DNA of 63,576 bases, the filler included, from Octopus bimaculoides (lineage: Eukaryota): the NCBI RefSeq assembly GCF_001194135.2. It is 6 parts of 6 records of this genome, joined end to end, with 100 filler letters (N's around TTAATTAATTAA, not from the genome) between each part and the next. Parts side by side here need not be neighbours in the genome. Positions count along the whole stretch, not along the records: positions 28,046 to 39,006 come from NC_069010.1; 5 more parts are not named here. The stretch is one strand, 5' to 3'. Positions 6,109 through 39,106 of this stretch are shown here, in pieces (the first letter of the stretch is position 1; each line of letters begins with the position of its first letter). The translations under genes were made by a program, and so were the position numbers. The notes under the pieces are model-generated. The model saw only the letters and a program-made list of their open reading frames with translations. It had not been told where the DNA came from and did no database searches.

Positions 6109-6943
6109 TCTTCTCTTTTGTTCGTTCGTTCCTTCCATCGTTTTATTTTCTATCTTCGTTTTTATTGCTTACTTCTTTTTCTTTCATTCTTTCTTTTTCA
6201 TTCTCTGAATTCCTTCTTACTCGACGGTTTTTACCATTCTTAGTTTTTCTCTGTACTCAGTGTTTCCGTCTTTATTCTTCCTTCCTTCTTTTAATTCTTT
6301 ATTTATTGTGTCTCTATTCTATTCTTTTAATTTTATTGCGTGCGTTTCCTTCCTATCTGTTTCATCTGTCTTCGAGTCAATCTATTTCTATTCTATTAGC
6401 TCTTCTATTTTTATCGTTCATATCCTCATATTTGTTTCAATGTAGCATTACTTGAAGATTATGGTGACGAATGAAGGAAGTCCTTGTCCAATGTAAACCA
6501 CCGGAAGTAATCTCCTATATCAAGGAGGTGAATAAACAAACAAAAGGGGGGAAAATGAAGGAACTTAGACACAGGGTTATAACTTGGTTTAATCCACCAT
6601 AAAACATGCAGATAGCCTCTTTTACTATTAGATTAACGCCTCTCGTGAGGAAGTGGGGCGTGAGTACTCTAAAAATTTTAACAGAAATACTGTTAAACAA
6701 TGTTGGTTCACCACATTCAGAATCCTCAGAATTCTCTAATTTAGCTCAAATATGTAGATAAATTAATAATATTAAACCACTTAATTACGTACATAGAGTC
6801 AGCACTTTGGTCTGGATGTAACTGTTTGAACTCCGTCAATTGTTCCATTAACTCCAAATAACTGAAAACAATGTGGTTTATCAATCTAATGTGGACATAC
6901 ATTCAGTATATAAAGCATGTATAATACTATCTGCAAATAATGC

Positions 6944-7113
6944 AGCAGCGGCTGTGTGGTAAGTAGCTTGCTTACCAACCACATGTTTCTGGGATTAGTC
7001 CCACTGCGGGGCATCTTGGGCAAGTGTCTTCTACTATAGCCTCGGGCCGACCAAAACCTTGTGAGTGGATTTGGTAGACGGAAACTGAAAGAAGCCCATC
7101 GTATATATGTATG

Positions 7114-7192
<79 letters not shown>

Positions 7193-7410
7193 TTGTGTGT
7201 CTGTCTTTGTCCCCGCAACATCGCTTGACAACCGATGCTGGTGTGTTTACGTCCCCGTAACTTAGCGGTTCGGCAAAACAGACCGATAGAATAAGTACTA
7301 GGCTTGCAAAGAATAAGTCCTAGGGTCGATTTGCTCGACTAAAGGTGGTGCTCCAGCATGGCCGCAATGAAATGACTGAAACAAGTAAAAGAGTAAAAGA
7401 GAAAGAGTAT
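6944..7410 (+). mobile_element. tRNA-headed SINE family B (CORE-like) carrying an internal (AT)n(GT)n microsatellite
   Basis: Head ggctgtgtggtaagtagcttgc..gtcccactgcg, body gggcaagtgtcttctactatagcctcgggccgacc, internal microsatellite and (aaaagagt) tail. Fragments of the family also lie at 12075-12200, 46255-46428 and 59085-59250 (all minus). Confidence 0.8.
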
Positions 7411-7869
7411 GAGTTTAAGTGCAGATATATCTAACACCTTAATAAGAAGACGGTGACATTATTAAGTCACCTCTGGAGATTAACAGTAACTAACATGGAA
7501 TATATTCTGCAGTGGAAGACCTTTACTAGAGACGTATCATAAATGATGAACACACAATGTAAAGTATGCTTAGAAGAACCAATACATATACTCTTTGCAT
7601 AAACAGAGCATTAAGAAAAAAGGCAAATTCTGGAGAAGTAAAAATTTGTTGACACGCGGTTTACAGGATTTTCCTAAATTAGAGAAGCATTCCGGGTCCC
7701 AGTAACGTAGCATTTCCAGCAAATTATTGGAGATTACGGTGTGAGTTTATTATACGGAATAGAATATACAGGACACCATTCGAAAGTATACCAATGTGCA
7801 GTAGTGTGTAAAGACGACTAACGGCATAGTTTGCACGACACCAGCAATCATAGTCGATTGTAACAACAC

Positions 7870-7900
7870 CACCACTGATACAATCACCACCACTACCACC

Positions 7901-7932
<32 letters not shown>

Positions 7933-8160
7933 CAGTATCATCATCACCATCACCATCATCGTCATTGTCGTCGTCGTCGTCGTCATCATCATCATCATCA
8001 TCGCCGTGGTCATTGTCATCTCCAGTATTTTCAACATCATTCCCACTATTATCAACACAATCAATTACTGCTTAAACCATTAATCTATTATCAAGATTAT
8101 TATATCATCATCACCATCGTCGTCGTCGTCGTCGTCATCATCATCATCATCATCAACATC

Positions 8161-8222
<62 letters not shown>

Positions 8223-8257
8223 CATTATCATCGTCATCATCATCATCATCGTTATCA

Positions 8258-8331
<74 letters not shown>

Positions 8332-8359
8332 CATTATCATCGTCATCATTATCATCATC

Positions 8360-8445
<86 letters not shown>

Positions 8446-8720
8446 TCAACTCTAATCACCAATATCGATACCCTTATGTCATATGATCATTACTTATTTA
8501 TCCTCATTACTTTTAGTTTTATTATTGTTGATATTTGCTATTGATAATGCTGTTGAGCTTAAAATATCGTTATTGGTACAGTTATTCGTAGTAACAATCT
8601 TAATACCATCATTAACCCCAAGAATACATTCACCACCATCACCACTATACCATTGCCACCACCACCACCACCACCACCACCACTACAGCCACCAACAACA
8701 ACATCATTATATCCATTATT
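7870..8720. repeat. Compound trinucleotide array (ACC/AAC/TCA/TCG/TTA)n
   Basis: Pure and mixed triplet runs, including long (TTA)n; poly-I/N/D ORFs are artefacts. Confidence 0.95.
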
Positions 8721-9059
8721 AACAGTAATGTTCGTAGAAAATTATGAATCTCTTTTATCTTTACTAATATCATTAGAATTATTATCACTATCCGATAACT
8801 AATAAACTAATATTAAAATCATTATCAGTATCTACTTAACTAGCATTACTAATATAATTAAAATCATTATCACTGTCTACTACTAACACATTCACAGCTA
8901 GTACCACCACCCCTTTTTACGATCATCATCCCTATTGACTTTACTGCGTCCATCAAAGTTATATCAGATCAGTGTCGAGTTCATTGACAATAATTTACGA
9001 TAACGGATGAACAGAAAATACAGAGTTTCGTTGATATATTTATAAAAAGGTAACAGCCT

Positions 9060-9495
9060 CTTTTGGTCATGAATGACCATAGGACTGCACGGAGAAAGTT
9101 ACCCTCAGAGGCACAAGTCCAGGCAAGGTTGTTTTATGGAAGACCAGCAAGTCGCCCATGCATACTGGCCCCCACTCTTCGGACATGAATAACCATGGGA
9201 TTGCACCTAGAAAGTTACCGTCCAAAGCACAAGCCCAACCAAGCTTGTTTTATAGGAGACCAGCAGTCACCCATACATACTGGCCCCCACTCTCCACGCC
9301 CCAAAGGAAAGGCAATGACCGATATAGCTTGGCACCAATGATGTCACAACTCATTTCTACAGCTGAGTTAACTCGAACAGCATGAAATAAAGTGTCTTGC
9401 TCAAGAACATAATACACAACCCGGTTGAGGAATTGAACTCACTACTACATGACTGTGAGCTCAACGCCCTAACCACTGAGCCATGCACCTTAACG
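9060..9495 (-). mobile_element. SINE family C with partial tandem duplication of the 3' body
   Basis: The block atgaataaccatgggattgcacctagaaagttacc..cagcagtcgcccatgcatactggccccc occurs twice (about 9065-9180 and 9185-9300). Confidence 0.75.
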
Positions 9496-9609
9496 CAGGT
9501 AAATCTAGCAACTTTGCTTCGTACCCTAGCACTCATAACTCTAAATAATACGTATTTAAATTTTTTTTTTAATCTCGATAGATTCCTCGCTTTAATATGG
9601 ATTTCAAAT

Positions 9610-10255
9610 TTTGGTACAAAGCCAGCAACTTCGGGAAATGGGCCGGTTGATTACAGTAACCCCAGTAATGAAATGGTACTTATTTCATGGACCCCGATAC
9701 GTTGTAAGGTAAAGTTGAACTCAGAATGCTGCTAAGTATCTTTGCCCGCACGCTAACGATTCTGCCGTCTCGTTGCCTTTAAACTTCGCTATAGTATTAA
9801 CGTATTTGATTATAAGACGGTGAGCTATCAGAATCGTTAGCGCGCCGGGCAAAATGCTTTGCGGAATTTCGTCCGTCTTTACGTTCTGAATTCAAATTCT
9901 GCTGAGGTCGACTTCGCCTTTCATCCTTTCGAGGTCGATTAAATAAGTACCAGTTGAGTACTGGGGTCGATGTAATCTACTAACCCCCTTCCCCGAAATT
10001 ACTGGCCTTGTGCCAAAATTTGAAATAATTACTACCGTATTTGATGATAAAGCGGTGAGGTGGCAGGATCGTTAAACCGCTGGGGAAAATGCTTAGCCTG
10101 TCTTCACGTTCTGAGTTCAAATTCCGTCCAGATTGACTTTGCTTTTCATCTTTTCGGGGTCGTTGAAATTAGGACCAGTTGAACAGTGGGGGTCGATGTA
10201 TTGGACTTACCTTTTCATCGAACTTGCTGGCTTTGTGCCAAATTTAGAACCAAAA
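9610..10255. mobile_element. Cluster of three family A SINEs (9610-9780 minus, 9815-10030 plus, 10049-10255 plus)
   Basis: Each carries the gttagc..cggg..aaatgctt head and tttcatc.tttcg.ggtcga core. Confidence 0.8.
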
Positions 10256-12629
10256 TTACCGCATCTGATGACATAAAAGACGCACAAGCATATTGGACGC
10301 ACTTCAGTTTTAGCAGAACATATTCAGGAAAGAGCTTTTAAAAAGGCATTAAAGATTGTGGTAGCCTCGACTCCTGATATCAGATTCTGGGTGATTTCTA
10401 TCAGATATCTTTGGACAAAAAGAAATGTGTCTTTTAAGCCATCAAATATACTGTACAGTAAAAATTACTACTATTCATAGTACTAGGGTTACCAATAAAT
10501 AGTAGCAAGATTTCATGATATAATTTTAATGAAATATTATTTTGTAAAAAAAAAACAATTGTAATTATAAAACAAGAGGAAATGAGATTCGTAGAAGCCA
10601 AAAAGAAAGCAACAGAGAAGAAAATGGGCTAGAAAGGGAATTTGATAGCGACAGTTTGGCCAGTTATCCAGAAGAATTTCATTTTACGATATAGACCATA
10701 CACATATATACTTTTACTAACACACACACACACACGCACACACACACACACACACACAAATAAGACACACAACTTTCGAACGTTTTCAAGTACTTTTGCC
10801 TGTAACATTCCATCATGATTTCTCTACAGAGAATTTCTGCAAGTGTTAAAGGGGGGGCGGGCGGATACTTGGGGTGCAGTTTAGAATGGACAAACCACTC
10901 AAAAACTGCATAAACATGTGCGGAAATTTCACAAAGCCCTGCCTGGAGACGTTCCTTCAACATGGATAAGCAAAATTCTTTGCACTCGTAGCAACTTTCG
11001 AAATACTAGGAAATATTTCCATTGAAGTGTTCCTAAGTTGGAATTGGTNNNNNNNNNNNNNNNNNNNNNNNNNNNNNNNNNNNNNNNNNNNNNNNNNNNN
11101 NNNNNNNNNNNNNNNNNNNNNNNNNNNNNNNNNNNNNNNNNNNNNNNNNNNNNNNNNNNNNNNNNNNNNNNNNNNNNNNNNNNNNNNNNNNNNNNNNNNN
11201 NNNNNNNNNNNNNNNNNNNNNNNNNNNNNNNNNNNNNNNNNNNNNNNNNNNNNNNNNNNNNNNNNNNNNNNNNNNNNNNNNNNNNNNNNNNNNNNNNNNN
11301 NNNNNNNNNNNNNNNNNNNNNNNNNNNNNNNNNNNNNNNNNNNNNNNNNNNNNNNNNNNNNNNNNNNNNNNNNNNNNNNNNNNNNNNNNNNNNNNNNNNN
11401 NNNNNNNNNNNNNNNNNNNNNNNNNNNNNNNNNNNNNNNNNNNNNNNNNNNNNNNNNNNNNNNNNNNNNNNNNNNNNNNNNNNNNNNNNNNNNNNNNNNN
11501 NNNNNNNNNNNNNNNNNNNNNNNNNNNNNNNNNNNNNNNNNNNNNNNNNNNNNNNNNNNNNNNNNNNNNNNNNNNNNNNNNNNNNNNNNNNNNNNNNNNN
11601 NNNNNNNNNNNNNNNNNNNNNNNNNNNNNNNNNNNNNNNNNNNNNNNNNNNNNNNNNNNNNNNNNNNNNNNNNNNNNNNNNNNNNNNNNNNNNNNNNNNN
11701 NNNNNNNNNNNNNNNNNNNNNNNNNNNNNNNNNNNNNNNNNNNNNNNNNNNNNNNNNNNNNNNNNNNNNNNNNNNNNNNNNNNNNNNNNNNNNNNNNNNN
11801 NNNNNNNNNNNNNNNNNNNNNNNNNNNNNNNNNNNNNNNNNNNNNATATATATATATATATATACATATATACACATATTTACATATATACACACACACA
11901 TACATATGTATGTATGGCTGTGTGATGGAGTTGCTGGTGGAATTCCGTTGTTCGACTATGACGATATGTGTAAATATTTGAGTACTTTACTGACACAATT
12001 CTCATACGACATCAGCATGACACATGAGAAAAGACTGTACATTTCTGATTTACCGTTATGAGATACAATCGACCTGGCAGGCTTCCACTTACGCAGTTTC
12101 CATCTACGTATATTCAGTCTTGACGAATGGGTCAACTCGTGGTTATAGAAACTTATATTTGCCTACGATCTCACATTGTGGGTTCAATCCCGGGACCGGT
12201 GGTTTCGATACGAACGTCTCAAACATAGTACGCTCACATACATACATACATACATACATGCACGTCCAGATTACAAGTTCAGGTTTATGTCTGCAATTAT
12301 TGGGGCTTTCGGATACGTAACACACAGCCTAAATACCAATCTTGAGGAAATAAGCTTCTCAAAACCAGAACGGAGAAAGGTGATTCGAAAACTACAGATT
12401 CATGCCATCAGTGGAACTTCAAAAATTTGTAAAACTTTTGAGTAGTTATCATTTAAGCATGTCTAGATATGAAAGTATATGCATGAAAATGTATGTATAA
12501 AACAACACATATAAATCTGCACGTATACAAACATACATTCACACACACACACATACATACATACATACACAGAGGTGTGTTCGTGTGTTTGTGCGTATGT
12601 GTGTATGTTTGTGTGAGTGAAAAACGTTT

Positions 12630-27945: not shown

Positions 27946-29382
27946 NNNNNNNNNNNNNNNNNNNNNNNNNNNNNNNNNNNNNNNNNNNNTTAATTAATTA
28001 ANNNNNNNNNNNNNNNNNNNNNNNNNNNNNNNNNNNNNNNNNNNNATATATATATAGATATATATATAAGACCACACATCGAAATATGTAATGTATACAT
28101 GCTTGTGATTGTCACCTATGAATGCTCGGCAACTCGTATTGGTTTGTTTACATTCTCGTAACCTAGCAGCTAGACAAATAACTTGCTAGACTAACTACCC
28201 CACTTTAAAAATATAAGTACTGCGGTAGATTTCTTTGACTAACCCCGTCAACGTGATACCCCAGGATGGCCGAAGTCCACTGATTGAAGTATGGATAGAT
28301 AAAAGATAAAAGAGGAAACATATGTATATGCGTGAGTGTATTTGCTATTTGCGTCTTAATATCACGCAAAAGTTGTAAACATGCATCATCGTTATACAAG
28401 TGGGGTTCTTTGTTTCTTGAAAACCTTTTCTGTAAGAGGATCAGTTTTCCTTGCCTGAAGCAGGTGATGTTTGGGGTTTGTAACAGCATCTGGCCATAGA
28501 AAATCTGTCTTAATGAATTATGCCCGATCCATGCAACCATGGGTGTGTATGTGTGCACGTGTGTGTGTGCATGTGTGTTTACGTATGTGAATGTGTGTGT
28601 ATATGTGTGAGTGTATATGTGTGTGAGTGTGTGTGAAATAGAGTGAGAGAAAGTGAGTGTTTTTGTGTGTGTGTGTGTGTGAGAGAGTGAGAGTGAGTGA
28701 GTATGTGAAAGAGAGAGATAGAGAGAGACATAGAGTGAGTGTTTATGAAAGAGGGAAAGACAGAGANNNNNNNNNNNNNNNNNNNNNNNNNNNNNNNNNN
28801 NNNNNNNNNNNNNNNNNNNNNNNNNNNNNNNNNNNNNNNNNNNNNNNNNNNNNNNNNNNNNNNNNNNNNNNNNNNNNNNNNNNNNNNNNNNNNNNNNNNN
28901 NNNNNNNNNNNNNNNNNNNNNNNNNNNNNNNNNNNNNNNNNNNNNNNNNNNNNNNNNNNNNNNNNNNNNNNNNNNNNNNNNNNNNNNNNNNNNNNNNNNN
29001 NNNNNNNNNNNNNNNNNNNNNNNNNNNNNNNNNNNNNNNNNNNNNNNNNNNNNNNNNNNNNNNNNNNNNNNNNNNNNNNNNNNNNNNNNNNNNNNNNNNN
29101 NNNNNNNNNNNNNNNNNNNNNNNNNNNNNNNNNNNNNNNNNNNNNNNNNNNNNNNNNNNNNNNNNNNNNNNNNNNNNNNNNNNNNNNNNNNNNNNNNNNN
29201 NNNNNNNNNNNNNNNNNNNNNNNNNNNNNNNNNNNNNNNNNNNNNNNNNNNNNNNNNNNNNNNNNNNNNNNTCGTTGAAGCCCTCTCTGGGTTCTTAATA
29301 CACCAAATTCCTTAAGGGATGTCTATCCGAGACAAAACTCAGAACAAGCGCCCTCCTGAGTTTCTCTATGCATTATAAATGA

Positions 29383-30115
29383 TCCACACACAAACTGTCA
29401 TATATAGATGAGTACATACATGTAAACATTGGCAGTTATGCTGTATTAATATTGTTATAAAAAAACGTATCAATGAATTCAACCAGAAAGAAGAAAGGTT
29501 TTGTTCCGTACCCTATATAGCTTATCATTCCTCATCGAGAAAAAGACTATCCTTGAAAGGGCTGATATTTCTTCGACTTTCAGATGTTTTGGTAAACTCT
29601 TTGGTAAGGAAATAAAGGAAAATGCCTGTATATCTTCTTGCTGTGGATCAGGGTATGAGTGGTTATAGAGCTGGTAGAGAAAAATGGAAGAGAAATTGAA
29701 ATTGATAAATAATGAATAACACTACTACAATTGTGACTGCTGTTATTGTTGTAACCTCTTCAATATTACAACACATATCATAATAGCTAAAGCTATCAAT
29801 ACCATACGCTACCACTGTCTCATTCATAAGTAACCATTGGGGTTTCTGCATTGGTCAACTAATTATTGGTCTGTCCAGTAGTGTTCTACTTTTTTTCTCT
29901 GTCTCTTTCTCGGGTTCGCAGTGACATGAATACAGAAGTATTTGGTGGAAGATTATGTTTATCTCATTGTTTTCAACCAATGACATCATTTTCTACTATT
30001 TATTCCTGAATTCTTTTGTAACAAGCACACATACAACCAAATACATGCGTACACCCCCATAGCTATACATAATTACACATTGACACTAATGTCCATTTCA
30101 CTGTATTGGTTGACA
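29383..30115. repeat. Outer inverted-repeat arm (pairs with 38291-39006)
   Basis: Direct reverse-complement match; ~96-99% over 29383-29680 and ~90% over the rest (by eye). Confidence 0.95.
29512..29670 (-). CDS. Internal exon, adhesion-GPCR GAIN-domain-like (copy L)
   Basis: Polypyrimidine tract + CAG acceptor, 159 nt open phase 0, donor AGG|GTACGG. Peptide LYNHSYPDPQQEDIQAFSFISLPKSLPKHLKVEEISALSRIVFFSMRNDKLYR resembles the GAIN (S).I.LP..L.....SR..F......LF/Y segment. Confidence 0.6.
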
Positions 30116-30116
30116 G

Positions 30117-30158
<42 letters not shown>

Positions 30159-31648
30159 NNNNNNNNNNNNNNNNNNNNNNNNNNNNNNNNNNNNNNNNNN
30201 NNNNNNNNNNNNNNNNNNNNNNNNNNNNNNNNNNNNNNNNNNNNNNNNNNNNNNNNNNNNNNNNNNNNNTATATATGTCTGTGTGTATTCATGTAATCAC
30301 ACACGCGTGTGTATGTGTGTTTATTGATTGACGACAGCAGTAAATACATATAAATAACATTGTCTCTCCCACCATTGTTACCACACTTATTTATTACATT
30401 TTTTCCAAAATATTTTGACTTGCAAATTCATTGAAATGTATAATTTTCTGTCTTCCATAAAATTCCTCTTTTAAAATGGAAGAGAAGCAGAAGAACCAAG
30501 AAGAAGGATGCTATAGACGTAGAAACAGATGCAATAACAGGGAAGGGCAAATTAAGGTGTAAAAGAGAGAGAGAAATGAAAGGAGCAACTGTTTTGTCAT
30601 CAATTCAGTTACATATAAATCATTTTAAATTATTCATAACATTAAAATTTTAATTAGCGTCATGTAAATTCTTACATTTAACTATTTCTACAAATTTTAA
30701 GAGATGCAATACAAATAGGAGACTTTGTGCACTGATCCAACAGCTAGAAATAACAGTAAAATTTCTTCAAATCGCATCCTTCAATCTTAAACTAGGATGG
30801 ACAAATTGAAGAATACATTTCTAATATAAAAAAATGCAGTCACGATTGGAAAGCATTTTATCATAGTTCGGTTTGATGAGAGTTAATTTTGGGTTAACCA
30901 ACAAGGAAAGAAGTATCTATGCAGTAGACGAACCTGCTAGAAATAACAACAAATGCTCTTCATGACGTTACCATTTCTGTAACAACTGATTTATTTCCAT
31001 GCACTGTGCAATATTTCCATGACAACTCATATAGAAATCAACTCGTTTGAACGCTTCAAAAAGCAATAAGCTCATTGATCTTTTCTGTTTCGCCGAAAAC
31101 CATAATACCCTTAAGGCAGTGTTAAGTAGGCGGTTATAATTAGGATAGATGTAGAAAGAAAAGATATAAGAATGATGATGGAGGAGCAGAAGAATTTGAA
31201 AAGATAATTAACCTAGTATCTCTTTAACAATTAGACTCATTAATATGAACCTATAAACAGAAGAGTCATCGTCCATAGACAAAGTTATTGAATGTTTAGT
31301 TTTGAGAATCTGGTATTTTGAGGCCGCCACAGAAATTCTAAGCCATGTTAGCAGCAGACAGGTTGTCTACACATCACAAGAAATGTTTTATATTGAAGAA
31401 CACAACTTTCTGTACTTACCTGTGGTTGTGTTAATAATATATTTTTGTGTGAATAATATAATTTGTCATCAAATATTTATAAAGATTTAAAAAGAAATAT
31501 GAAAGATGTTGTATAACGAGAATACACTGTGATGCTTTGGACATTTAACTGTACGACTTTTGATGCTTAATTGCAAATGCACGGATATTATATATTAACG
31601 GACGTATATATGAATGTTGAGTGGTGAGAAAGGACTGTATGTGTGTGA

Positions 31649-31709
<61 letters not shown>

Positions 31710-32416
31710 GCACTGTATTTATGTGTACATATAAATATGAATCAGTTTGCATGAAAGAGGATGTGCATATGCGTTGAGAGAAAAACTGGGCAAAATGAAT
31801 GAGATATAAGGTGGAAGAGAGAAAGAGGGGCGCCGACACTGGTATAGNNNNNNNNNNNNNNNNNNNNNNNNNNNNNNNNNNNNNNNNNNNNNNNNNNNNN
31901 NNNNNNNNNNNNNNNNNNNNNNNNNNNNNNNNNNNNNNNNNNNNNNNNNNNNNNNNNNNNNNNNNNNNNNNNNNNNNNNNNNNNNNNNNNNNNNNNNNNN
32001 NNNNNNNNNNNNNNNNNNNNNNNNNNNNNNNNNNNNNNNNNNNNNNNNNNNNNNNNNNNNNNNNNNNNNNNNNNNNNNNNNNNNNNNNNNNNNNNNNNNN
32101 NNNNNNNNNNNNNNNNNNNNNNNNNNNNNNNNNNNNNNNNNNNNNNNNNNNNNNNNNNNNNNNNNNNNNNNNNNNNNNNNNNNNNNNNNNNNNNNNNNNN
32201 NNNNNNNNNNNNNNNNNNNNNNNNNNNNNNNNNNNNNNNNNNNNNNNNNNNNNNNNNNNNNNNNNNNNNNNNNNNNNNNNNNNNNNNNNNNNNNNNNNNN
32301 NNNNNNNNNNNNNNNNNNNNNNNNNNNNNNNNNNNNNNNNNNNNNNNNNNNNNNNNNNNNNNNNNNNNNNNNNNNNNNNNNNNNNNNNNNNNNNNNNNNN
32401 NNNNNNNNNNNNNNNN

Positions 32417-34094
32417 ATGTAATATTTGTGACAACCTTAAAGTTGTATTATTACTTCTTGGGTTATAGTTGGGCTACATAAAGCGTATCTGCTTCTTGTG
32501 TCCATGGAACAGGAGAGATGACAAGAAATACAGCAAAAAACGTGATTAGCCAGTTCTAGATGAAATAAACATGTTGTTAAACACAATGTGAAATACCAAG
32601 CACTTATGGACATTCAGAAAGTTCATCTTCTACCATTTCACATTAAATTTGGCCCTTTGAACAATTTCATTACGATTGTGGATGATCAATGTAGTAGTTT
32701 CCAATAATTAAAGGATAAATTCAAAGGAATTTTGAGGATGCTAAATTAGAAACTGGATGTTTCACTCAACCTCAGATCCGCAGTGTCATCCTCGACTCAT
32801 CATTTACATTTAATTTAAATGAGCATAAACTAGGAGAGTAGACATATTTTGTTGGAGTTTTCAAAAATTGCTTTGGAAACCACCAAGCTGAAATCCACTG
32901 TAAACTCGTACAAAACGTTCAAATCCTATGAAAAATGGGATGTAGAATGTCTCTGAAAATGCATTTTTTTACATTTTCATATTGATTTCTCCCTGGTGAA
33001 CCTTGGGGCTGAGTACATGCCAGGTGAACTCCTTCACCAACAGATTTCAGGGAAAACAGATACCAAGTTAATTTCAATCTAAATATGATGGGAGATTATT
33101 GTTGGTTCCTGCAGAAGGAGAACTCGTCTTCATACAAATGACAAAGTAAGAAGAAATACCAAAGTTTCCCTTAGGAACAGGAAGTCACCTTTCGGTTGTA
33201 ACAAGAAAATACAAATGCGCTTTGGGTGGTTGGTTGGGCGGAGGGATGGTAACTCTTTCAACGAAATTCTGTTTTAAGCTGGAAGAAGGATGAAAGACAC
33301 TCCTGTTCGCTAATTATTTAAGAATAGCCTGGAAAAGTAGTTTAGACGGCTTTCGTAACAGAAGCGGGTGAGAGAAAAAAATGAAACATAAGGATTTCGA
33401 TTACACAAAATCTGGATATGATAGAACAATTTAGATATCGGATGTGAAATTAGCATAAGAAATTTGATAGGAATCAGTAGTTTACATATATGTAACCAAG
33501 AAGTTAAAGTTTGTTGCCTAGGAATATCATCCTTTTTGTTTCCAATTTCCAATGAACGTTTCTTTTGCCCTCAATACCCTCTTATATCTGCCATCGAACT
33601 CACCTTACTTTTCGTCACTCAATATATCCAGCCCTACGTACCTCTTACCTCTACCTCTGTCACTGTGTACCTTCTCTATCCTCTGTACTTCACATTATCT
33701 CGCTAAGTCTTAACTATCAATGGTTTTATCTCACTCTTTCGCCCCGCCGTTTTTTGATTTGTCACCAAACTCCGCCTCCTCTATTTTCCTTACCATCCCC
33801 CAAACTGCAATTCTCCATTGTCCACGCCTCCACTCATGTCAACCACTCACAATTCATTTGCATCCTCATCTCTACCATCTATCACTCTGCTTTCACACTC
33901 ATGAACCAACCTACACAGGCATTCTCGATTCTCTCCGTCTATTCCTTCTCAGTCCACCTTGTACTGTGAGGGTACTCTCTGACACCTCATCTCCACTATC
34001 CTTCTCTTTTCTCAGCTGGGATATCCATGTATCTCCTCCACAGAAAGACGCATAGTTTTGTATCTCTATCATACATTTACCTCCCGATACTTGC
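32417..34094 (+). mobile_element. Chapaev-like (CMC) transposase relic plus downstream sequence; inner inverted arm pairing with 35000-36531
   Basis: ICDNLKVVLLLLG..ICFLCPW, DAKLETGCFTQPQIR, KMGCRMSLKMHFLHFHIDF..NLGA, MMGDYCWFLQ; stops and frameshifts present. Confidence 0.75.
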
Positions 34095-34999
34095 CATAAA
34101 GGCCCCCCCTCAATATTGCACCCCTCCTAATCTGTTAAAGGTGATTGTCGTGAGTCTTACTTGGTGGCCTCACTAATGCTGGGGCCAAAATACAACTCCC
34201 AACACACTTGGTAAAATGGTTGGCTTCAGGAAGGCAATCCAGCCACAGAAACCAGGCAAAATCAGACATTGGAGGTTAATTGCAGCCCTCTCACGGGTCG
34301 AATCCTGTAGAATAGTCGAACCCATGCCAGCATGCAATACGTAAATTTATGATAATGACATTATATTCATACGTATATACACCCATCTAATACATAAATG
34401 TATATAAGTATGACGCAGAGAAGGAGGATATGGAAAATAAAAGATCCTGCAATTAGGAATAGATTTAGAGAAATCTACTGATACTTATCAGAGAAACTGA
34501 TACTTATGACTGTAAGGATTTAAATTTAAACACTTGTACTTATAGATGAAACCTGGACATTTCTACGAAATTTCTAGCTCAGTGCTACGGAACAGACATG
34601 TGATTGGAGCTAAGCCCTGACTAAGTCGAAGGTGTTGGAACGATAGGGTTGGTAGGTCAGTAAAGGCTAAGAGAGACATGGAAAGCCTGGAAGGAAGGTA
34701 GTAGTAGGGAGCGATATCAAATGTTAGAAGCGCAGCTGAGGGACTGGTATATTTAGCGATGGATAAGAGAGGGAAAAGGGGATTAGTGCTAGTCCAGAAA
34801 TGTGCTGCTCAGAGGTGTAAGTTGTTTAAGATCGTGAGACTGAAAGAACGAATCGAAATGTCTTTTATTGATAAATGTATTCAGAGCAATGACTGTATAN
34901 NNNNNNNNNNNNNNNNNNNNNNNNNNNNNNNNNNNNNNNNNNNNNNNNNNNNNNNNNNNNNNNNNNNNNNNNNNNNNNNNNNNNNNNNNNNNNNNNNNN

Positions 35000-37350
35000 G
35001 CAAGTATCGGGAGGTAAATGTATGATAGAGATACAAAACTATGCGTCTTGCTGTGGAGGAGATACATGGATATCCCAGGTATAAAAAGAGAAGGATAGTG
35101 GAGATGAGGTGTCAGAGAGTACTCTCAAGGTACAAGGTGGACTGAGAAGAAATAGGCGGAGAGAATCGAGAATGCATATGTAGGTTGGTTCATGAGTGTG
35201 AAAGCAGAGTGATAGGTGGTAGAGATGAGGATGCAAATGAATTGTGAGTGGTTGACATGAGTGGAGGCTTGGACAATAAAAAATCCCAGTTATGTGTAAG
35301 GTAATGAAAACAGCAGTGGATCACAGAAGTGGAGCTGATTGGTTACAATACAAGAAAAGAAAATCGGTGGGGGAGAAAGAACTAAATAAAACCATTGATA
35401 GATAAGATATAGCGAGATAATGTGAAGTACAAAGGATAGAGAAGTTGCACAGTGACAGAGGTAGATGTAAGAGGCACGTAGGGCTGGAAATATTGAGTGA
35501 CGAAAAGTAAGGTGAGTTCGATGACATATATAAGAGGGTATTCAGGGCAAAAGAAACGTTCATTGGAAATTGGAAACAAAAGGATGATAATCCTAGGCAA
35601 CAAACCTCAACTTCATGGTTACATATATGTAAACTACTGATTCCTATCAAATTTCTGATGCTAATTTAACATCTGATATCTAAATTTTTCTATCACGTCC
35701 AGATATCGTTTCATCGAAATCCCTTATTTTTCATTTTTTTCTTCTCATCCGCTTCTGTTACGAAATCCGTCTAAACTACTTTTCAATGCCAAGTTTTATG
35801 TTAAGCATACATAAATAATTAGTGAACAGGTGTGCCTTTCCTCATTCTTCCAGCTTGAAACAGAATTCCATTAGTGGAAATACCATCCCTGCGCCCAACC
35901 AACCACGTTAGTATTTTGTTGTAACTACCGAAAGGCGACTTCCTGTTCCTACGGGAAACTTTGATATTTCCTCTTAATCTGTCATTTGTATGAAGACGCG
36001 TTCCCCTGCAGGAACCAACAATGATCTTCCATCATATTTGGGTTGAAATTACCTTGGTATCTGTTTTCTCCAACTGAGATCTGTTGGTGGAATCGCTCAC
36101 CAGGCTTGTCGCTAAGCCTCCTAGTTTTTTCTCATTTCGATTAAATGTAAACGATGAGTCGAGGATGATACTGAGGATTTGAAGTCAAGTGAAACTCAGC
36201 TTCTAGGTTAGCATCTGTGAAACTTCCTTTGAATTTATCCTTTAATTATTGAAAACCATTACATTGATCATCCATTCTCTTCACGAAATTCTTCAAAGCT
36301 CCAAGTTTAACGTGAACTGGTGGAAGATGGACTTTCTGAGGCTCAAGAAGTGCTGGGTATTTCACACTTTGATTACCAACATGTTCAGTTCTAGATGGCC
36401 AATCACATTTTTTGTAGTATTTTTTGTCATCTCTGATGCTCCATGGACACAAAAAGCAGATACGCTTTATGTAGCCCAAATATAACCCAAGAAGTAATAA
36501 TACAACTTTAAGGTTGTCACAAATATTACATATGTGGTCCTTATATTTGATGAGGCTTAGGAGCAGTTCCATTGATTCATAACTCTCATTAAGGTCAGTG
36601 GATAAAGATATTGAAAGATTTTCATTGCCGTTGTACAGTAATACAGCTTTAAGACAAGCTTCACTAGAGTCAATGAACAGTCTCCATGGTTTTGGATCAT
36701 AGCAAAAGCCAATAGTTTCCATCAAACCACTGATATCGTGGCAGAAACAAATGTTGTCCTCCTCTCAGTAAAATGATGAAAACTGCAGATGGTGAATAGG
36801 AACTTTGGAGTTTCGCTGGAGAAAAATTCCGATCTTGAGGTCTGGAATTGTGCAACTCTACCTTTTCTTTTAATAATTCCAAATTGGACACTAAGTCATT
36901 TAACTCCGTTTGACTTAACAAATGTAGGGAGCTAGTTGCATCTGGAAAATATATGCCATTCTTTCCCCTATTTCTATATTACTATCAACCTCTTCAGGTG
37001 AACTGCTGTCTTCAACAACGAATCTACTTGGCTGTCATGTACCGACTGACCGTTGGGCAATTGGCAACTCTTGACTCAGTGTTGCTAACTCTGGATAAAT
37101 TTTATTGATCAGAATCATAAGAATGTTCATATAGTTGTCAAACAAAAATTGCTTTCACCTTGAAAATCAAACACCATATCACTGGCATTAAGATGATTAA
37201 AACCAAAATCTGGACGGGGTAAGAAATCTTATTAAGTGATTTGCATTTTTGCACAAAATCTAGACATGATAGAACAAATCGAATTATAGATTTGAAATGA
37301 GAATAGCAAAATTAGCGAAGAACACTTATTTGGTCTTCTGTAACGAAACC
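35000..37350 (-). mobile_element. Chapaev-like transposase relic (longer copy)
   Basis: LSQTELNDLVSNLEL (36697-36921) and WRLFIDSSEACLKAVLLYNGN..ICDNLKV..ICFLCPW..PPVHVKLGALKNFVK (36246-36725); lacks ~170-190 nt present in the left copy. Superfamily name is from recall. Confidence 0.75.
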
Positions 37351-37499
37351 TTTGTTGCTTGGTGTGATAGAAGTTTTAGATGAGGGGTAAAAGAAGTGAT
37401 TCCAAGGAAAAGAATAATTAATAGCACAAAAAGGGGATGGAATATGTGCAGTTTTGCTCTTATATAATTACAGCAACTGAGGAAATTATGCCATAGTCA

Positions 37500-38290
37500 G
37501 GGAGTGATCTTAGTGCGGGTGATCTGCAGATAAGTTGGTGGGGAGGTTTCTCAGGTACAAATTGAATTCGTGGGAATTGACAATAAAGATATGCTTTTTA
37601 AAATCCCAATTTGCATCAGACCGACGGTTCTTCTCGAGTCGTTTGTCGTCATTTTCTGCGAGAGACTCAGCAATCTCAGGTTGGTATTTCCTCTACTGCG
37701 TCCCAAGCTTCCTCTGGTTCCATTTACGTTTAGCGATCGACACTTCTTTTTGCAATAATCCTCATTTCATTGCATCACATGACTATACCAGGGATGTATG
37801 GCGGTTAGTGGTATTAATTGAAAGGTTAGTAGAGTTCTGTATTACGTTATGTGTTCATATTGAGTTGTGGAAGATATTGATGAAAATTGCCTCCTTATTC
37901 ATTCTTTGCTGTACTGAGGTGTTCTGTGAACATTAATAGACGGGGAAAATTAGGAAATTAGGATTAAGGTTCCTAGCACACCTTTCTATGTGTTCACTGA
38001 CTTGTATCTGTCTGTATTGTGGGTGGCGGATTTGTTCTTTGTAGAGAGTGGTTCTTCGACGGAGTGATATTTCTGTTTGGCCAATATATTGATTACTGCA
38101 CTCTAAGTAGGTAATGACATAGATTAGGTTTTCCGAGGCGTAGAGGAAATTTGATTTAATCTTAAATATTTCACCTTGTTTAAAGTGGAACACTAAACCC
38201 TCCAAAAGGTGGTGTGCCACAATTAGGTCGACCACATTTCTTTCACTTTTGGTTCCGTTGTTAATGGATATAGTCTCGTGCTGATTAATA
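37500..38290 (-). mobile_element. Penelope-like element 3' part: GIY-YIG endonuclease plus terminal-repeat region
   Basis: FKIKSNFLYASENLIYVITYLECSNQYIGQTEISLRRRTTLYKEQIRH..VSEHIERC, then RMNKEAIFI. Confidence 0.85.
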
Positions 38291-38725
38291 TTGTCAACCA
38301 ATACAGTGAAATGGACATTAGTGTCAATGTGTAATTATGCATAGCTTGGGGGCATGTATTTGGTTGTATGTGTGATGGTTACAAAAGGATTCAGGAATAA
38401 ATAGTAGAAAATCATGTCATTGGTTGAAAACAATGAGATAAACATGATTTTGCACCAAATACTTCTGCATTCATGTCACTGCGAACCCGAGAAAGAGATT
38501 GAGAAAAAAGTAGTATTCTACTGGACAGACCAATAATTAGTTGACCAATGCAGAAACCCCAGTGGTTGCTTATGAATGAGACAGTGGTAGCGTATGGCAT
38601 TGATAGTTTTAGCTATTATGATATGTGTTGTAATATTGAAGAGGTCACAATAAAAGCAGCCACTGTTGTAGTAGTGTTATTTATTATTTATCAATTTCAA
38701 ATTTTCTTCCATTTTTCTCTACCAG

Positions 38726-38884
38726 CTCTATAACCACTCATACCCTGATCCACAGCAAGAAGATATACAGGCATTTTCCTTTATTTCCTTACCAAAGAGT
38801 TTACCAAAGCATCTGAAAAACGACGAAAGATCAGCCCTTTCAAGGATAGTCTTTTTCTCGATGAGGAATGATAAGCTATACAGG
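38726..38884 (+). CDS. Internal exon, adhesion-GPCR GAIN-domain-like (copy R)
   Basis: ttttcttccatttttctctaccAG acceptor, 159 nt open, AGG|GTACGG donor. Peptide LYNHSYPDPQQEDIQAFSFISLPKSLPKHLKNDERSALSRIVFFSMRNDKLYR; 6 nt differences from copy L. Confidence 0.6.
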
Positions 38885-39106
38885 GTACGGAACAAAACCT
38901 TTCTTCTTTCTGGTTGAATTCATTGATACGTTTTTTTATAACAATATTAATACAGCATAACTGCCAATGTTTACATGTATGTACTCATCTATATATGACA
39001 GTTTGTNNNNNNNNNNNNNNNNNNNNNNNNNNNNNNNNNNNNNNNNNNNNTTAATTAATTAANNNNNNNNNNNNNNNNNNNNNNNNNNNNNNNNNNNNNN
39101 NNNNNN

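What the first reader, a model, noticed from the sequence alone, without database searches (positions are those of the whole stretch)
29512..38884. Two intact, oppositely oriented copies of an adhesion-GPCR (GAIN-like) exon, missed by the ORF track
Seen: the same 159-nt phase-0 exon, with a polypyrimidine-AG acceptor and GT donor, lies at 29512-29670 (minus) and 38726-38884 (plus). Both copies are open. They differ at 6 nt: two are synonymous, and four cluster in 11 nt, changing LKVEEIS to LKNDERS. Established: GAIN subdomain B of ADGRG-type receptors has an I.LP..L...SR..F....LF pattern, and GPS/GAIN receptors are expanded in cephalopods. Inference: these are divergently transcribed paralogs of an expanding adhesion-GPCR cluster, with localised diversification in an exposed GAIN loop. 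The ~8 kb between them is mostly transposon relics and I found no upstream exons there, so each gene may have to splice across or through the other. Caveat: the downstream intron is as conserved as the exon, so the identity alone does not show selection.
Basis: partly seen in the sequence, partly recalled or inferred. Interest (0 to 1): 0.72.

Follow-up and report, generated by a model that had tools for sequence, protein, structure and literature searches.

The report
Duplicated octopus adhesion-GPCR GAIN exon
The two 159-base copies are a real coding exon from the known octopus-specific expansion of adhesion GPCRs, but their head-to-head layout rests on an unsequenced assembly gap, so this is an ordinary new member of a known family in a fragmentary assembly.

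Summary
The same 159-nt open unit lies at 29512-29670 (-) and 38726-38884 (+), with 6 differences.

The identification also holds. The 53-aa peptide matches ten Octopus proteins named "adhesion GPCR G6(-like)" over its full length (E down to 1e-17). The matched segment lies inside their GAIN domain, about 50 residues before the GPS motif. Annotated paralogues use the same splice boundaries.

Nearly the whole piece is an inverted pair of copies of one gene segment: upstream intron, exon and downstream intron. Each arm is collinear with a single-copy locus in O. sinensis. The orientation switch falls inside the exact 100-N gap at 34900-34999, and both contigs end before the expected upstream exon. 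So "divergently transcribed, splicing across each other" is unsupported.

The arms are old paralogues. Inner intron divergence is 13-16%, as large as to O. sinensis, so they are not alleles. A recently homogenised patch surrounds the exon.

All four replacement changes fall on codons 32, 33 and 35. The left copy matches another paralogue exactly across that tract. Four of the six exon differences are unique to the right copy, and its other two states match O. sinensis. This looks like a micro-conversion or a complex mutation.

The family expansion is already published.

The parts
29512..29670 (-). Left copy of the 159-nt phase-0/phase-0 GAIN-B exon (LYNHSYPDPQQEDIQAFSFISLPKSLPKHLKVEEISALSRIVFFSMRNDKLYR)
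   Evidence: Searches give the sequence and open frame; tblastn hits from 10 Octopus aGPCR proteins start and end at these boundaries; no substitutions unique to this copy relative to L004 and L001.
38726..38884 (+). Right copy of the same exon (…HLKNDERS…)
   Evidence: four of the six differences are unique to this copy.
28199..34899 (-). Left arm: downstream intron, exon and most of the upstream intron of an aGPCR gene. It consists of four contigs separated by three collinear gaps.
   Evidence: collinear with O. sinensis L001 16594->11494 in minus orientation at 84-91%; 34211-34358 matches L001 11114-10964; 34218-34484 matches L003 6603-6338 (paralogue intron).
35000..39006 (+). Right arm: the same gene segment in the opposite orientation, on a single contig that begins inside the intron and is cut by the piece edge.
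   Evidence: 35228-37711, 38005-38184 and 38398-39006 match L001 11494-13944, 14763-14942 and 14939-15579 in plus orientation; 35000-35313 is the inverted partner of 33781-34094.
34900..34999 (.). Exact 100-N gap where the orientation switches. It is the only gap not bridged collinearly by the reference locus.
   Evidence: Among the loci fetched, the only other exact 100-N run is in a chromosome-level O. bimaculoides record (L004); none is in the unplaced scaffolds or in L005.
29390..29691 (-). High-identity tract between the arms (partner 38705-39006). It has 6 differences in 302 nt, against 26 substitutions and 11 indel columns in the next 428 nt.
   Evidence: One search lists the differences. 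Fisher p = 0.006. L-R divergence is 0.7-6.7% in the outer arms and 7-21% in the inner arms.
29567..29587 (-). Cluster of 5 differences in 21 nt (partner 38809-38829). It covers codons 28-35 in the variable segment between the conserved FISLPKSL and SRIxF strands.
   Evidence: clustering p = 0.005 within the exon; left is identical to L004 across the tract; the right copy's AACGACGAA is also present in paralogue L005.
30270..31847 (-). Left-arm intron segment with no counterpart in the right arm. The right arm has 293 bp (37712-38004) in its place.
   Evidence: no similarity to 36400-38400; it matches L001 14695-13949; 30370-31104 also matches the intron of paralogue L003.
36246..36725 (-). 159-aa ORF, an old repeat or TE relic inside the intron
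   Evidence: 26 homologues, the best 63% identical, on unrelated contigs; no Pfam family; the surrounding DNA is shared with L001 and L004, so the insertion predates the copies.
37933..38301 (-). 122-aa ORF with a weak GIY-YIG match (Penelope-like relic is my reading)
   Evidence: PF01541, E = 6e-4, 20.4 bits, below the 22.6 cut-off; 38005-38184 matches L001 14763-14942 at 91%.

Best explanation
Exon identity. The 159-nt unit is a genuine internal coding exon of an octopus lineage-specific adhesion GPCR family. Family members carry N-terminal leucine-rich repeats, a GAIN domain, a GPS motif and a secretin-type 7TM. Their GAIN and 7TM regions are most similar to vertebrate ADGRG receptors. The exon encodes 53 residues of GAIN subdomain B: the '..ISLPKSL' strand, a variable connecting segment, and the 'SRIxFxS…DKLYR' strands. 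It ends about 50 residues before the GPS motif.

Structure of the piece. The piece holds two paralogous copies of one gene segment. Each comprises most of the upstream intron, the exon and the start of the downstream intron. The left copy spans about 6.7 kb and the right at least 4 kb.

Age of the copies. The inner intron is 13-16% diverged between the arms, which is as far as either arm is from O. sinensis. A patch of at least 300 bp around the exon has been homogenised recently, most likely by gene conversion between paralogues (inferred). The five clustered differences lie within that patch. Three are unique to the right copy. At the other two, the right copy matches O. sinensis while the left matches paralogue L004. 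This is most simply one short templated conversion or one multi-nucleotide mutation (inferred).

Arrangement. The head-to-head layout is not shown by sequence. The orientation flips inside an exact 100-N gap. Both contigs end in the same intron, 0.4-1.3 kb short of where the upstream exon lies in three related loci. My commitment is that the junction is a scaffolding join of two nearby paralogous fragments. The 5' parts of those fragments are unassembled or sit on unplaced scaffolds. I do not think this is a real 9-kb divergent gene pair. Whether either copy still belongs to a complete, expressed receptor cannot be decided from this piece.
For: Shown:
- HMMER against 1.84 billion representatives gave 10 family hits covering residues 1-53, or nearly so, at E 1e-17 to 4e-4. 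All are Octopus proteins; seven are named ADGRG6(-like) and three are uncharacterised or hypothetical.
- Pfam on the hits: P0029 has LRR_8, GPS 659-702 and 7tm_2 717-953, with the exon equivalent at 558-610. In P0037 the GAIN model covers 166-369 and the exon equivalent is 296-347.
- PDB matches: the GAIN-B region aligns to zebrafish ADGRG6 (6v55, E = 8e-19), ADGRG3 and ADGRG1. Full-length P0029 matches ADGRG2 (2e-68) and ADGRG6 (2e-65) better than the L, E, D and F groups.
- Exon boundaries are identical to annotated exons in L001 (acceptor only), L003 and L004.
- Both arms are collinear with single-copy O. sinensis L001. L001 itself has no inverted copy within +/-10 kb.
- Three-way divergence. 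Outer region: L-R 4.6% against 10.3% and 10.5% to O. sinensis. Inner regions: L-R 12.6% and 16.1% against 9.8-12.9%.
- No other family exon lies in the piece.
- The family assembly is fragmentary. Paralogues sit on unplaced 19-kb and 63-kb scaffolds, and one gene's introns reach 8-14 kb.
Against: - A scaffolder's join still implies physical proximity, so a real inverted duplication is not excluded. A real palindrome would also tend to break an assembly at its centre.
- I could not confirm the species or the assembler. That exact-100-N runs mark scaffolding joins is my own knowledge, backed by only one such run among the fetched O. bimaculoides loci.
- By L001 spacing, the left arm's upstream exon should fall at about 34714-34896, inside the contig. 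It is not there. This could mean it is truly absent.
- The O. sinensis counterpart is annotated as a 141-aa read-through fragment, and no GPS or 7TM exon lies within 10 kb downstream of it. This lineage may therefore be a decaying fragment.
- The exon is not more conserved than its introns.
Confidence: 0.72

Rival explanations
1. Real intragenic or local inverted duplication (a palindrome with diverged arms). One copy is the working exon of a gene whose upstream exons lie beyond the other arm. The second copy sits antisense as a pseudo-exon in that gene's intron.
For: The arms are inverted and homologous along their whole assembled length. A recent gene-conversion-like patch suggests the copies are physically close. 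Both exon copies keep intact splice sites and open frames.
Against: No read-through of the centre exists, because the flip lies in a 100-N gap. Inner arms are as diverged from each other as from O. sinensis, yet O. sinensis has one copy with the normal upstream exon and no inverted partner within 10 kb. Identity is lowest near the supposed centre and highest far from it.
Confidence: 0.3
2. One reading: two intact, divergently transcribed paralogous receptor genes about 9 kb apart. Each must splice across or through the other. Selection is diversifying an exposed GAIN loop.
For: Both exons are intact. Co-localised clusters and positive selection are reported for octopus-specific GPCR expansions. 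The clustered changes fall in the segment that varies in sequence and length among ADGRG receptors.
Against: No upstream exon lies in the interior, which is simply the same intron twice. The junction is unsequenced. dN/dS of 0.51 rests on 4 non-synonymous and 2 synonymous changes and shows nothing. The left copy's tract is identical to paralogue L004, so the pattern is one clustered event rather than repeated substitutions. The AF2 model of GAIN-B was too poor to show that the segment is an exposed loop.
Confidence: 0.08
3. The two arms are the two haplotypes of one locus, assembled separately and scaffolded next to each other.
For: The small left contig (29272-30158, 887 bp) and the many gaps are typical of a troubled short-read assembly. 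The outermost 150 aligned columns differ by only 0.7%.
Against: Substitution divergence is 4.6% in the outer arms and 12.6-16.1% in the inner arms. There is also a >1.2-kb segment present only in the left arm. That equals the distance to another species, O. sinensis, and is far above any allelic divergence I know of for octopus genomes (my own knowledge, not checked here).
Confidence: 0.03
4. Chance open frame or transposon fragment, not a host exon.
For: Pfam, PDB and the word-indexed protein search all found nothing with the 53-aa peptide alone. Forty-one ORFs of 50 aa or more occur in this AT-rich 11 kb by chance.
Against: Full-length matches at E down to 1e-17 to annotated aGPCRs, at the same splice boundaries and in the same position within GAIN.
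Confidence: 0.01

Closest known systems
O. bimaculoides XP_014790557.1/XP_014790558.1 'adhesion GPCR G6 isoform X1/X2' (P0052/P0044; locus L004, CM046630.1)
   Same: Its homologous exon is 83% identical to the left copy and 77% to the right at protein level. DNA around the exon is about 89% identical. Acceptor and donor are the same. The 21-nt tract is identical to the left copy, giving KVEEIS. The gene carries GAIN, GPS and 7tm_2.
   Different: It is a different locus. Its upstream intron is only 1.5 kb, and intron identity to the window is 83-84%. It has the following exons, the next one 3 kb downstream, which the window piece does not reach.
O. sinensis LOC118768404 (XP_036370683.1, P0027; locus L001, CM016887.1)
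   Same: It is the best collinear counterpart of both arms, at 84-91% over about 5 kb of intron, exon and downstream sequence. The acceptor is the same, and the read-through ORF ends at the same stop (VRNKTFLLSV* against VRNKTFLLSG*).
   Different: It is single-copy with the normal upstream exons (6894-10608) and no inverted partner within 10 kb. It is annotated as a 141-aa fragment beside a separate LRR_8 model. The exon is 74-78% identical at protein level.
Octopus-specific adhesion GPCR expansion ('group 3') of Ritschard et al. 2019, PMC6408891
   Same: Octopus-restricted class-B adhesion GPCRs with GPS and adhesion 7TM, and LRR in some members. The paper reports co-localised genes and signs of positive selection. 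The homologues found here share that domain set and taxonomic restriction.
   Different: I did not check that the accessions found here are the ones in that group. The two window copies match no protein retrieved here closer than 83%.
Vertebrate ADGRG6/GPR126 and other ADGRG receptors (PDB 6v55, 21du, 7xke, 7qu8, 9s9u, 5kvm)
   Same: They are the best solved-structure matches for the family's GAIN-B and 7TM. The motif vtLP..Ll…vSRi.F…glF aligns residue for residue with the exon.
   Different: The octopus proteins have N-terminal leucine-rich repeats. No CUB, pentraxin or SEA domain was reported for them by Pfam. Precomputed Pfam labels call their GAIN 'GAIN_ADGRA3'. The 'G6' name is an automated best-hit label, and orthology was not tested.

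Membership tests
Adhesion GPCR (class B2), GAIN domain | Significant sequence similarity of the peptide to the GAIN region of proteins that carry GPS and 7tm_2 | tested here: met
   E = 1e-17 to 4e-4 over the full 53 aa or nearly so; the hits carry GPS, 7tm_2 and, in P0037, Pfam GAIN covering the equivalent residues; a paralogue's GAIN-B aligns to ADGRG6, G3 and G1 structures.
Adhesion GPCR (class B2), GAIN domain | GPS motif (Cys pattern and HL/T cleavage site) encoded downstream in the same gene | tested here: inconclusive
   no GPS-encoding exon in the piece. Only 1.5 kb is available downstream of the left copy and 0.12 kb downstream of the right. Paralogues have the next exon 3-8 kb away and the GPS exon further still.
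Adhesion GPCR (class B2), GAIN domain | Secretin-type 7TM domain in the same gene | tested here: inconclusive
   none in the piece, with the same limitation. The O. sinensis counterpart also shows none within 10 kb downstream.
Adhesion GPCR (class B2), GAIN domain | Exon boundaries and phase shared with annotated family members | tested here: met
   L001 acceptor; L003 11436-11585; L004, 159 nt. The flanks are the same ..ctctaMcag|CTC and AGG|gtaYgg.
Adhesion GPCR (class B2), GAIN domain | Transcription and splicing of these particular copies | not testable with these tools
   No RNA-seq data were available. No retrieved protein contains either exact peptide, but the word index also missed true relatives.
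ADGRG subfamily / ADGRG6 orthologue | Closest similarity of GAIN and 7TM to ADGRG members | tested here: met
   ADGRG2, G6, G3, G4 and G1 rank above ADGRL, E, D and F. This was tested on paralogue P0029, not on the window genes themselves.
ADGRG subfamily / ADGRG6 orthologue | ADGRG6 ectodomain architecture (CUB, pentraxin, SEA, hormone-binding domain; my own knowledge of the family) | tested here: not met
   full-length P0029 shows LRR_8/LRR_4 N-terminally and none of those domains; precomputed Pfam labels the GAIN as GAIN_ADGRA3.
Octopus-specific adhesion GPCR expansion (Ritschard 2019, group 3) | Octopus-restricted clade with GPS and adhesion 7TM, some members with LRR | tested here: inconclusive
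   Domain set and taxon restriction agree. Clade membership was not tested by phylogeny or by matching accessions.
Genomic palindrome / inverted segmental duplication | Two arms in inverted orientation, homologous along their length | tested here: met
Genomic palindrome / inverted segmental duplication | Contiguous sequence through the centre joining the two arms | tested here: not met
   the switch lies inside the 100-N run at 34900-34999. The right contig starts inside the repeat at 35000.

The most novel reading that the evidence does not exclude
The arrangement is real, or real but direct rather than inverted. In that case one octopus adhesion-GPCR gene carries two diverged copies of a GAIN-B exon. 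Short ectopic conversions from other family members swap the variable segment between the conserved strands. This would be a way of generating receptor ectodomain variants, or alternative (mutually exclusive) GAIN exons.
Probability: 0.12. Interest if true: 0.55.

Novelty: new member of a known kind. Interest (0 to 1): 0.25.

Why it matters
It shows that an internal exon with no start codon can be recognised from raw sequence and then confirmed. It adds two apparently unannotated copies to a published octopus-specific adhesion-GPCR expansion.

It is also a caution. In short-read octopus assemblies this family is broken across gaps and unplaced scaffolds. An apparent head-to-head gene pair can therefore be nothing more than a scaffolding join.

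If the duplication and the micro-conversion are real, they illustrate how paralogues of this family exchange short tracts in a variable part of the GAIN domain. That would not change current views of the family.

Tried and rejected
Searches with the 53-aa peptide alone that found nothing:
- Pfam at E <= 10.
- PDB phmmer at E <= 10.
- The word-indexed 5.8-billion-protein search. It reported no candidate, although true relatives sharing long identical words exist (P0027, P0043). It is a false negative of the index.
- The JGI metagenome scan.

Only the exhaustive HMMER scan found the family.

Structure prediction: AlphaFold2 on an 11-row alignment headed by P0043 gave a confident helical GAIN-A. 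GAIN-B had pLDDT below 50 across residues 145-352. I therefore could not test whether the variable tract is an exposed loop, and I did not run a fold search on that model.

Literature: look-ups for the O. bimaculoides assembly method and heterozygosity returned nothing usable. Those points rest on my own knowledge and are marked as such.

Rejected explanations:
- Chance ORF.
- Alleles.
- A unique 8-kb TE-filled spacer.
- X (30270-31847) and Y (36532-38287) as evidence against arm homology. They are complementary. X is deleted in the right arm, and the partner of Y falls in the left gap.

Paralogue L005 as the direct donor of the right copy's tract is not convincing. It shares only a 9-nt run.
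Full report
**1. Observation**

The 159-nt unit is present at 29512-29670 (minus) and 38726-38884 (plus). Each copy has a long pyrimidine tract and AG before it, and AGG|GTACGG after it.

The copies differ at six positions. Positions 84 and 156 are synonymous. Positions 94, 95, 99 and 104 are non-synonymous within 11 nt. The result is LKVEEIS against LKNDERS.

Both frames are open for 80 codons from stop to stop. The frame has no early start codon, so it is absent from the mechanical ORF list.

In Markov-1 simulations of the piece, an interval with this acceptor, donor, phase and length is expected 0.09 times. That makes it mildly unusual, not decisive.

**2. What the exon is**

The peptide alone gave nothing in Pfam, in the PDB, in the word-indexed protein search or in a metagenome scan.

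An exhaustive HMMER scan of 1.84 billion representatives gave ten family hits. They cover residues 1-53, or nearly so, at E = 1e-17 to 4e-4 and 50-74% identity. An eleventh hit was a spurious repeat protein.

All ten are Octopus proteins from O. bimaculoides, O. sinensis and O. vulgaris. Seven are named 'adhesion G-protein coupled receptor G6(-like)'.

Domain layout of the hits:
- Full-length P0029 has LRR_8, GPS (659-702) and 7tm_2 (717-953). The exon equivalent is at 558-610.
- In P0037 the Pfam GAIN model covers 166-369, and the exon equivalent is at 296-347.

Matches to solved structures:
- The GAIN-B region of P0029 aligns to zebrafish ADGRG6 (6v55, E = 8e-19), ADGRG3 and ADGRG1.
- Full-length P0029 matches ADGRG2 and ADGRG6 best, at 2e-68 and 2e-65. 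These are ahead of the L, E, D and F groups.

The homologous exons in three annotated loci have the same boundaries: L001 (acceptor only), L003 11436-11585, and L004 (159 nt).

The exon identification is therefore secure. An octopus-specific adhesion-GPCR expansion has already been described (Ritschard et al. 2019, PMC6408891, 'group 3'). Its members carry GPS and 7TM, and 5 of 22 have LRR. The paper reports co-localised genes and signs of positive selection among the expansions.

**3. The real structure of the piece**

The repeat is not just the exon. There are two sets of inverted arms:
- Outer arms 29390-30119 and 38288-39006, 94% identical.
- Inner arms 32417-34094 and 35000-36531, 85-86% identical.

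The O. sinensis locus of the closest representative (L001, CM016887.1) explains the layout:
- The left block 28199-33866 is collinear with L001 16594->11494 in minus orientation.
- The right block 35228-39006 is collinear with L001 11494->15579 in plus orientation.
- Identity is 84-91%.

L001 itself is single-copy. It has the normal upstream exons (6894-10608) and no inverted partner.

The apparently unrelated middle segments are complementary:
- 30270-31847 matches L001 14695-13949. This stretch is deleted in the right arm.
- The partner of 36532-37711 falls in the left gap at 31848-32416.

The 'unique centre' 34095-34899 is also intron. It matches L001 11114-10964 and the intron of paralogue L003.

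So the ~8 kb between the exon copies is the gene's own upstream intron, present twice. The TE relics in it are a 159-aa repeat ORF and a weak GIY-YIG ORF. Both lie in DNA shared with L001, and the first also in DNA shared with L004, so they are older than the copies.

**4. The gaps**

Three gaps are bridged collinearly by L001 in the same order and orientation: 28767-29271, 30159-30269 and 31848-32416. The third is about 590 bp too short. All three sit next to microsatellites.

The fourth gap, an exact 100-N run at 34900-34999, is where the orientation flips.

The right contig starts inside the repeat at 35000, roughly equivalent to L001 11250. That is about 640 nt short of the upstream exon's donor. 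The left contig ends at 34899. Depending on the reference used, that is either just about at the expected upstream exon (L001 spacing) or about 0.9 kb short of it (L003 spacing).

No upstream exon is found anywhere in the piece.

Among the O. bimaculoides loci fetched, gap sizes are variable, with some 10-N runs. The only exact 100-N run is in a chromosome-level record. From my own knowledge, exact 100-N runs are the usual mark of proximity-ligation scaffolding joins of unknown size. This is a lead, not a test.

Paralogues of this family sit on unplaced 19-kb and 63-kb scaffolds. One paralogue gene (L003) has introns of 8-14 kb. Missing 5' parts are therefore plausible.

**5. Age and mosaic history**

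| Region | L-R | L-sinensis | R-sinensis |
|---|---|---|---|
| Outer | 4.6% | 10.3% | 10.5% |
| Inner C | 12.6% | 11.7% | 12.9% |
| Inner B | 16.1% | 12.6% | 9.8% |

Identity between the arms is highest in a tract of at least 302 nt, 29390-29691. It has six differences, and none in the 122 nt after the donor. The next 428 nt has 26 substitutions and 11 indel columns. Fisher's test gives p = 0.006.

The arms are therefore old paralogues, not alleles and not a fresh duplication. A recently homogenised patch surrounds the exon. Gene conversion is my inference for that patch.

The exon is not more conserved than its flanks. Among the four closest sequences, 20% of exon columns vary, against 14-16% of flank columns. 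dN/dS is 0.5-0.7 on 4-14 non-synonymous and 2-7 synonymous changes. Constraint on these two copies is not demonstrated.

**6. The clustered changes**

Five of the six differences lie within 21 nt. The probability of that by chance is 0.005 within the exon (post hoc).

A four-way alignment polarises them:
- The left copy is identical to O. bimaculoides paralogue L004 across the tract.
- Four of the six exon differences are unique to the right copy.
- At the other two, the right copy agrees with O. sinensis.

The right copy's AACGACGAA (NDE) is also found in paralogue L005/P0037, but in a different context.

The tract lies between the two conserved strands, in the segment that varies in sequence and length among ADGRG receptors.

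One short ectopic conversion or one complex mutation explains this at least as well as selection for diversity. I could not test whether the segment is an exposed loop, because the AF2 model of GAIN-B was of low confidence.

**7. Verdict**

- Exon identity, family, taxon and paralogy are supported.
- Head-to-head transcription, splicing across each other and adaptive diversification are not supported.
- I rate a false or unresolved scaffolding join of two nearby paralogous fragments as somewhat more likely than a real inverted duplication (about 0.3). Both remain open.
- Alleles (about 0.03) and chance (about 0.01) are effectively excluded.
- The O. sinensis counterpart is annotated as a 141-aa fragment that reads through the donor to the same stop codon as here. 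It has no GPS or 7TM exon within 10 kb. This particular lineage may be a truncated or decaying family member.
- Novelty is low. This is a new, apparently unannotated pair of copies from a published lineage-specific expansion.

Noticed in passing
window 29482-29511 (-) and 38885-38914 (+); L001 15446-15478: Reading through the donor gives VRNKTFLLSG* in both copies. The stop is at the same place as in the O. sinensis NCBI model, which ends …LYRVRNKTFLLSV. The first ~125 nt of the downstream intron vary less among four loci than the exon does (14% against 20% of columns). This could be a conserved splicing or termination element, or an alternative terminal exon.
   Followed up: partly
window 29882-29992 (-) and 38408-38467 (+): The conserved proximal intron translates to KMMSLVENNEINIIFHQILL…EPEK…EKKSRT. 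This weakly resembles the family's GAIN-A exon (KMLPLISNVSANITLHNILL…TPEE…AEKSKRT). tblastn gives E = 0.22, and shuffle p is 0.005-0.05, uncorrected. It is also seen in L001 and L003. It may be an ancient pseudo-exon relic, or chance.
   Followed up: partly
window 36246-36725 (-): A 159-aa ORF (…CFLCPWSIRDDKKYYKKCDWPSR…LPPVHVKLGALKNFVKRMD) has 26 homologues. The best is 63% identical. They lie on unrelated ENA, JGI and Logan contigs, and one is a sponge protein. No Pfam family matches. It is a widespread uncharacterised repeat or TE protein. Its left-arm counterpart is degraded.
   Followed up: partly
window 37933-38301 (-): A 122-aa ORF has a sub-threshold GIY-YIG match (E = 6e-4). I read it as a Penelope-like relic. 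The DNA is shared with O. sinensis L001 at 91%.
   Followed up: no
window 28543-28707, 30117-30158, 31636-31708: (TG)n, (TA)n and (TG)n microsatellites lie beside or within about 140 bp of the gaps at 28767, 30159 and 31848. These three gaps are therefore ordinary assembly breaks at simple repeats. The 100-N gap at 34900 is different.
   Followed up: yes
window 29663-29851 (-) and 38548-38733 (+): A 62/61-aa ATG ORF (MQKPQWLLMNETVVAYGIDSFSYYDMCCNIEEVT…) overlaps the acceptor in another frame and is open in both arms. It is probably chance.
   Followed up: no
L001 1-15478 (O. sinensis CM016887.1): NCBI splits this locus into an LRR_8 model (329 aa) and a 141-aa 'uncharacterized' model. tblastn shows the family's exons running collinearly across both models (6894-10608, then 15287-15445). 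No GPS or 7TM exon lies in the next 10 kb. Either the models are fragments of one gene, or the gene is truncated.
   Followed up: partly
tool behaviour, versus 20 and 37: The word-indexed protein search reported no candidate for the 53-aa peptide. Yet proteins sharing runs of 8-12 identical residues (P0027, P0043) are in the same collection. Negative results from that tool for short queries should not be trusted.
   Followed up: yes
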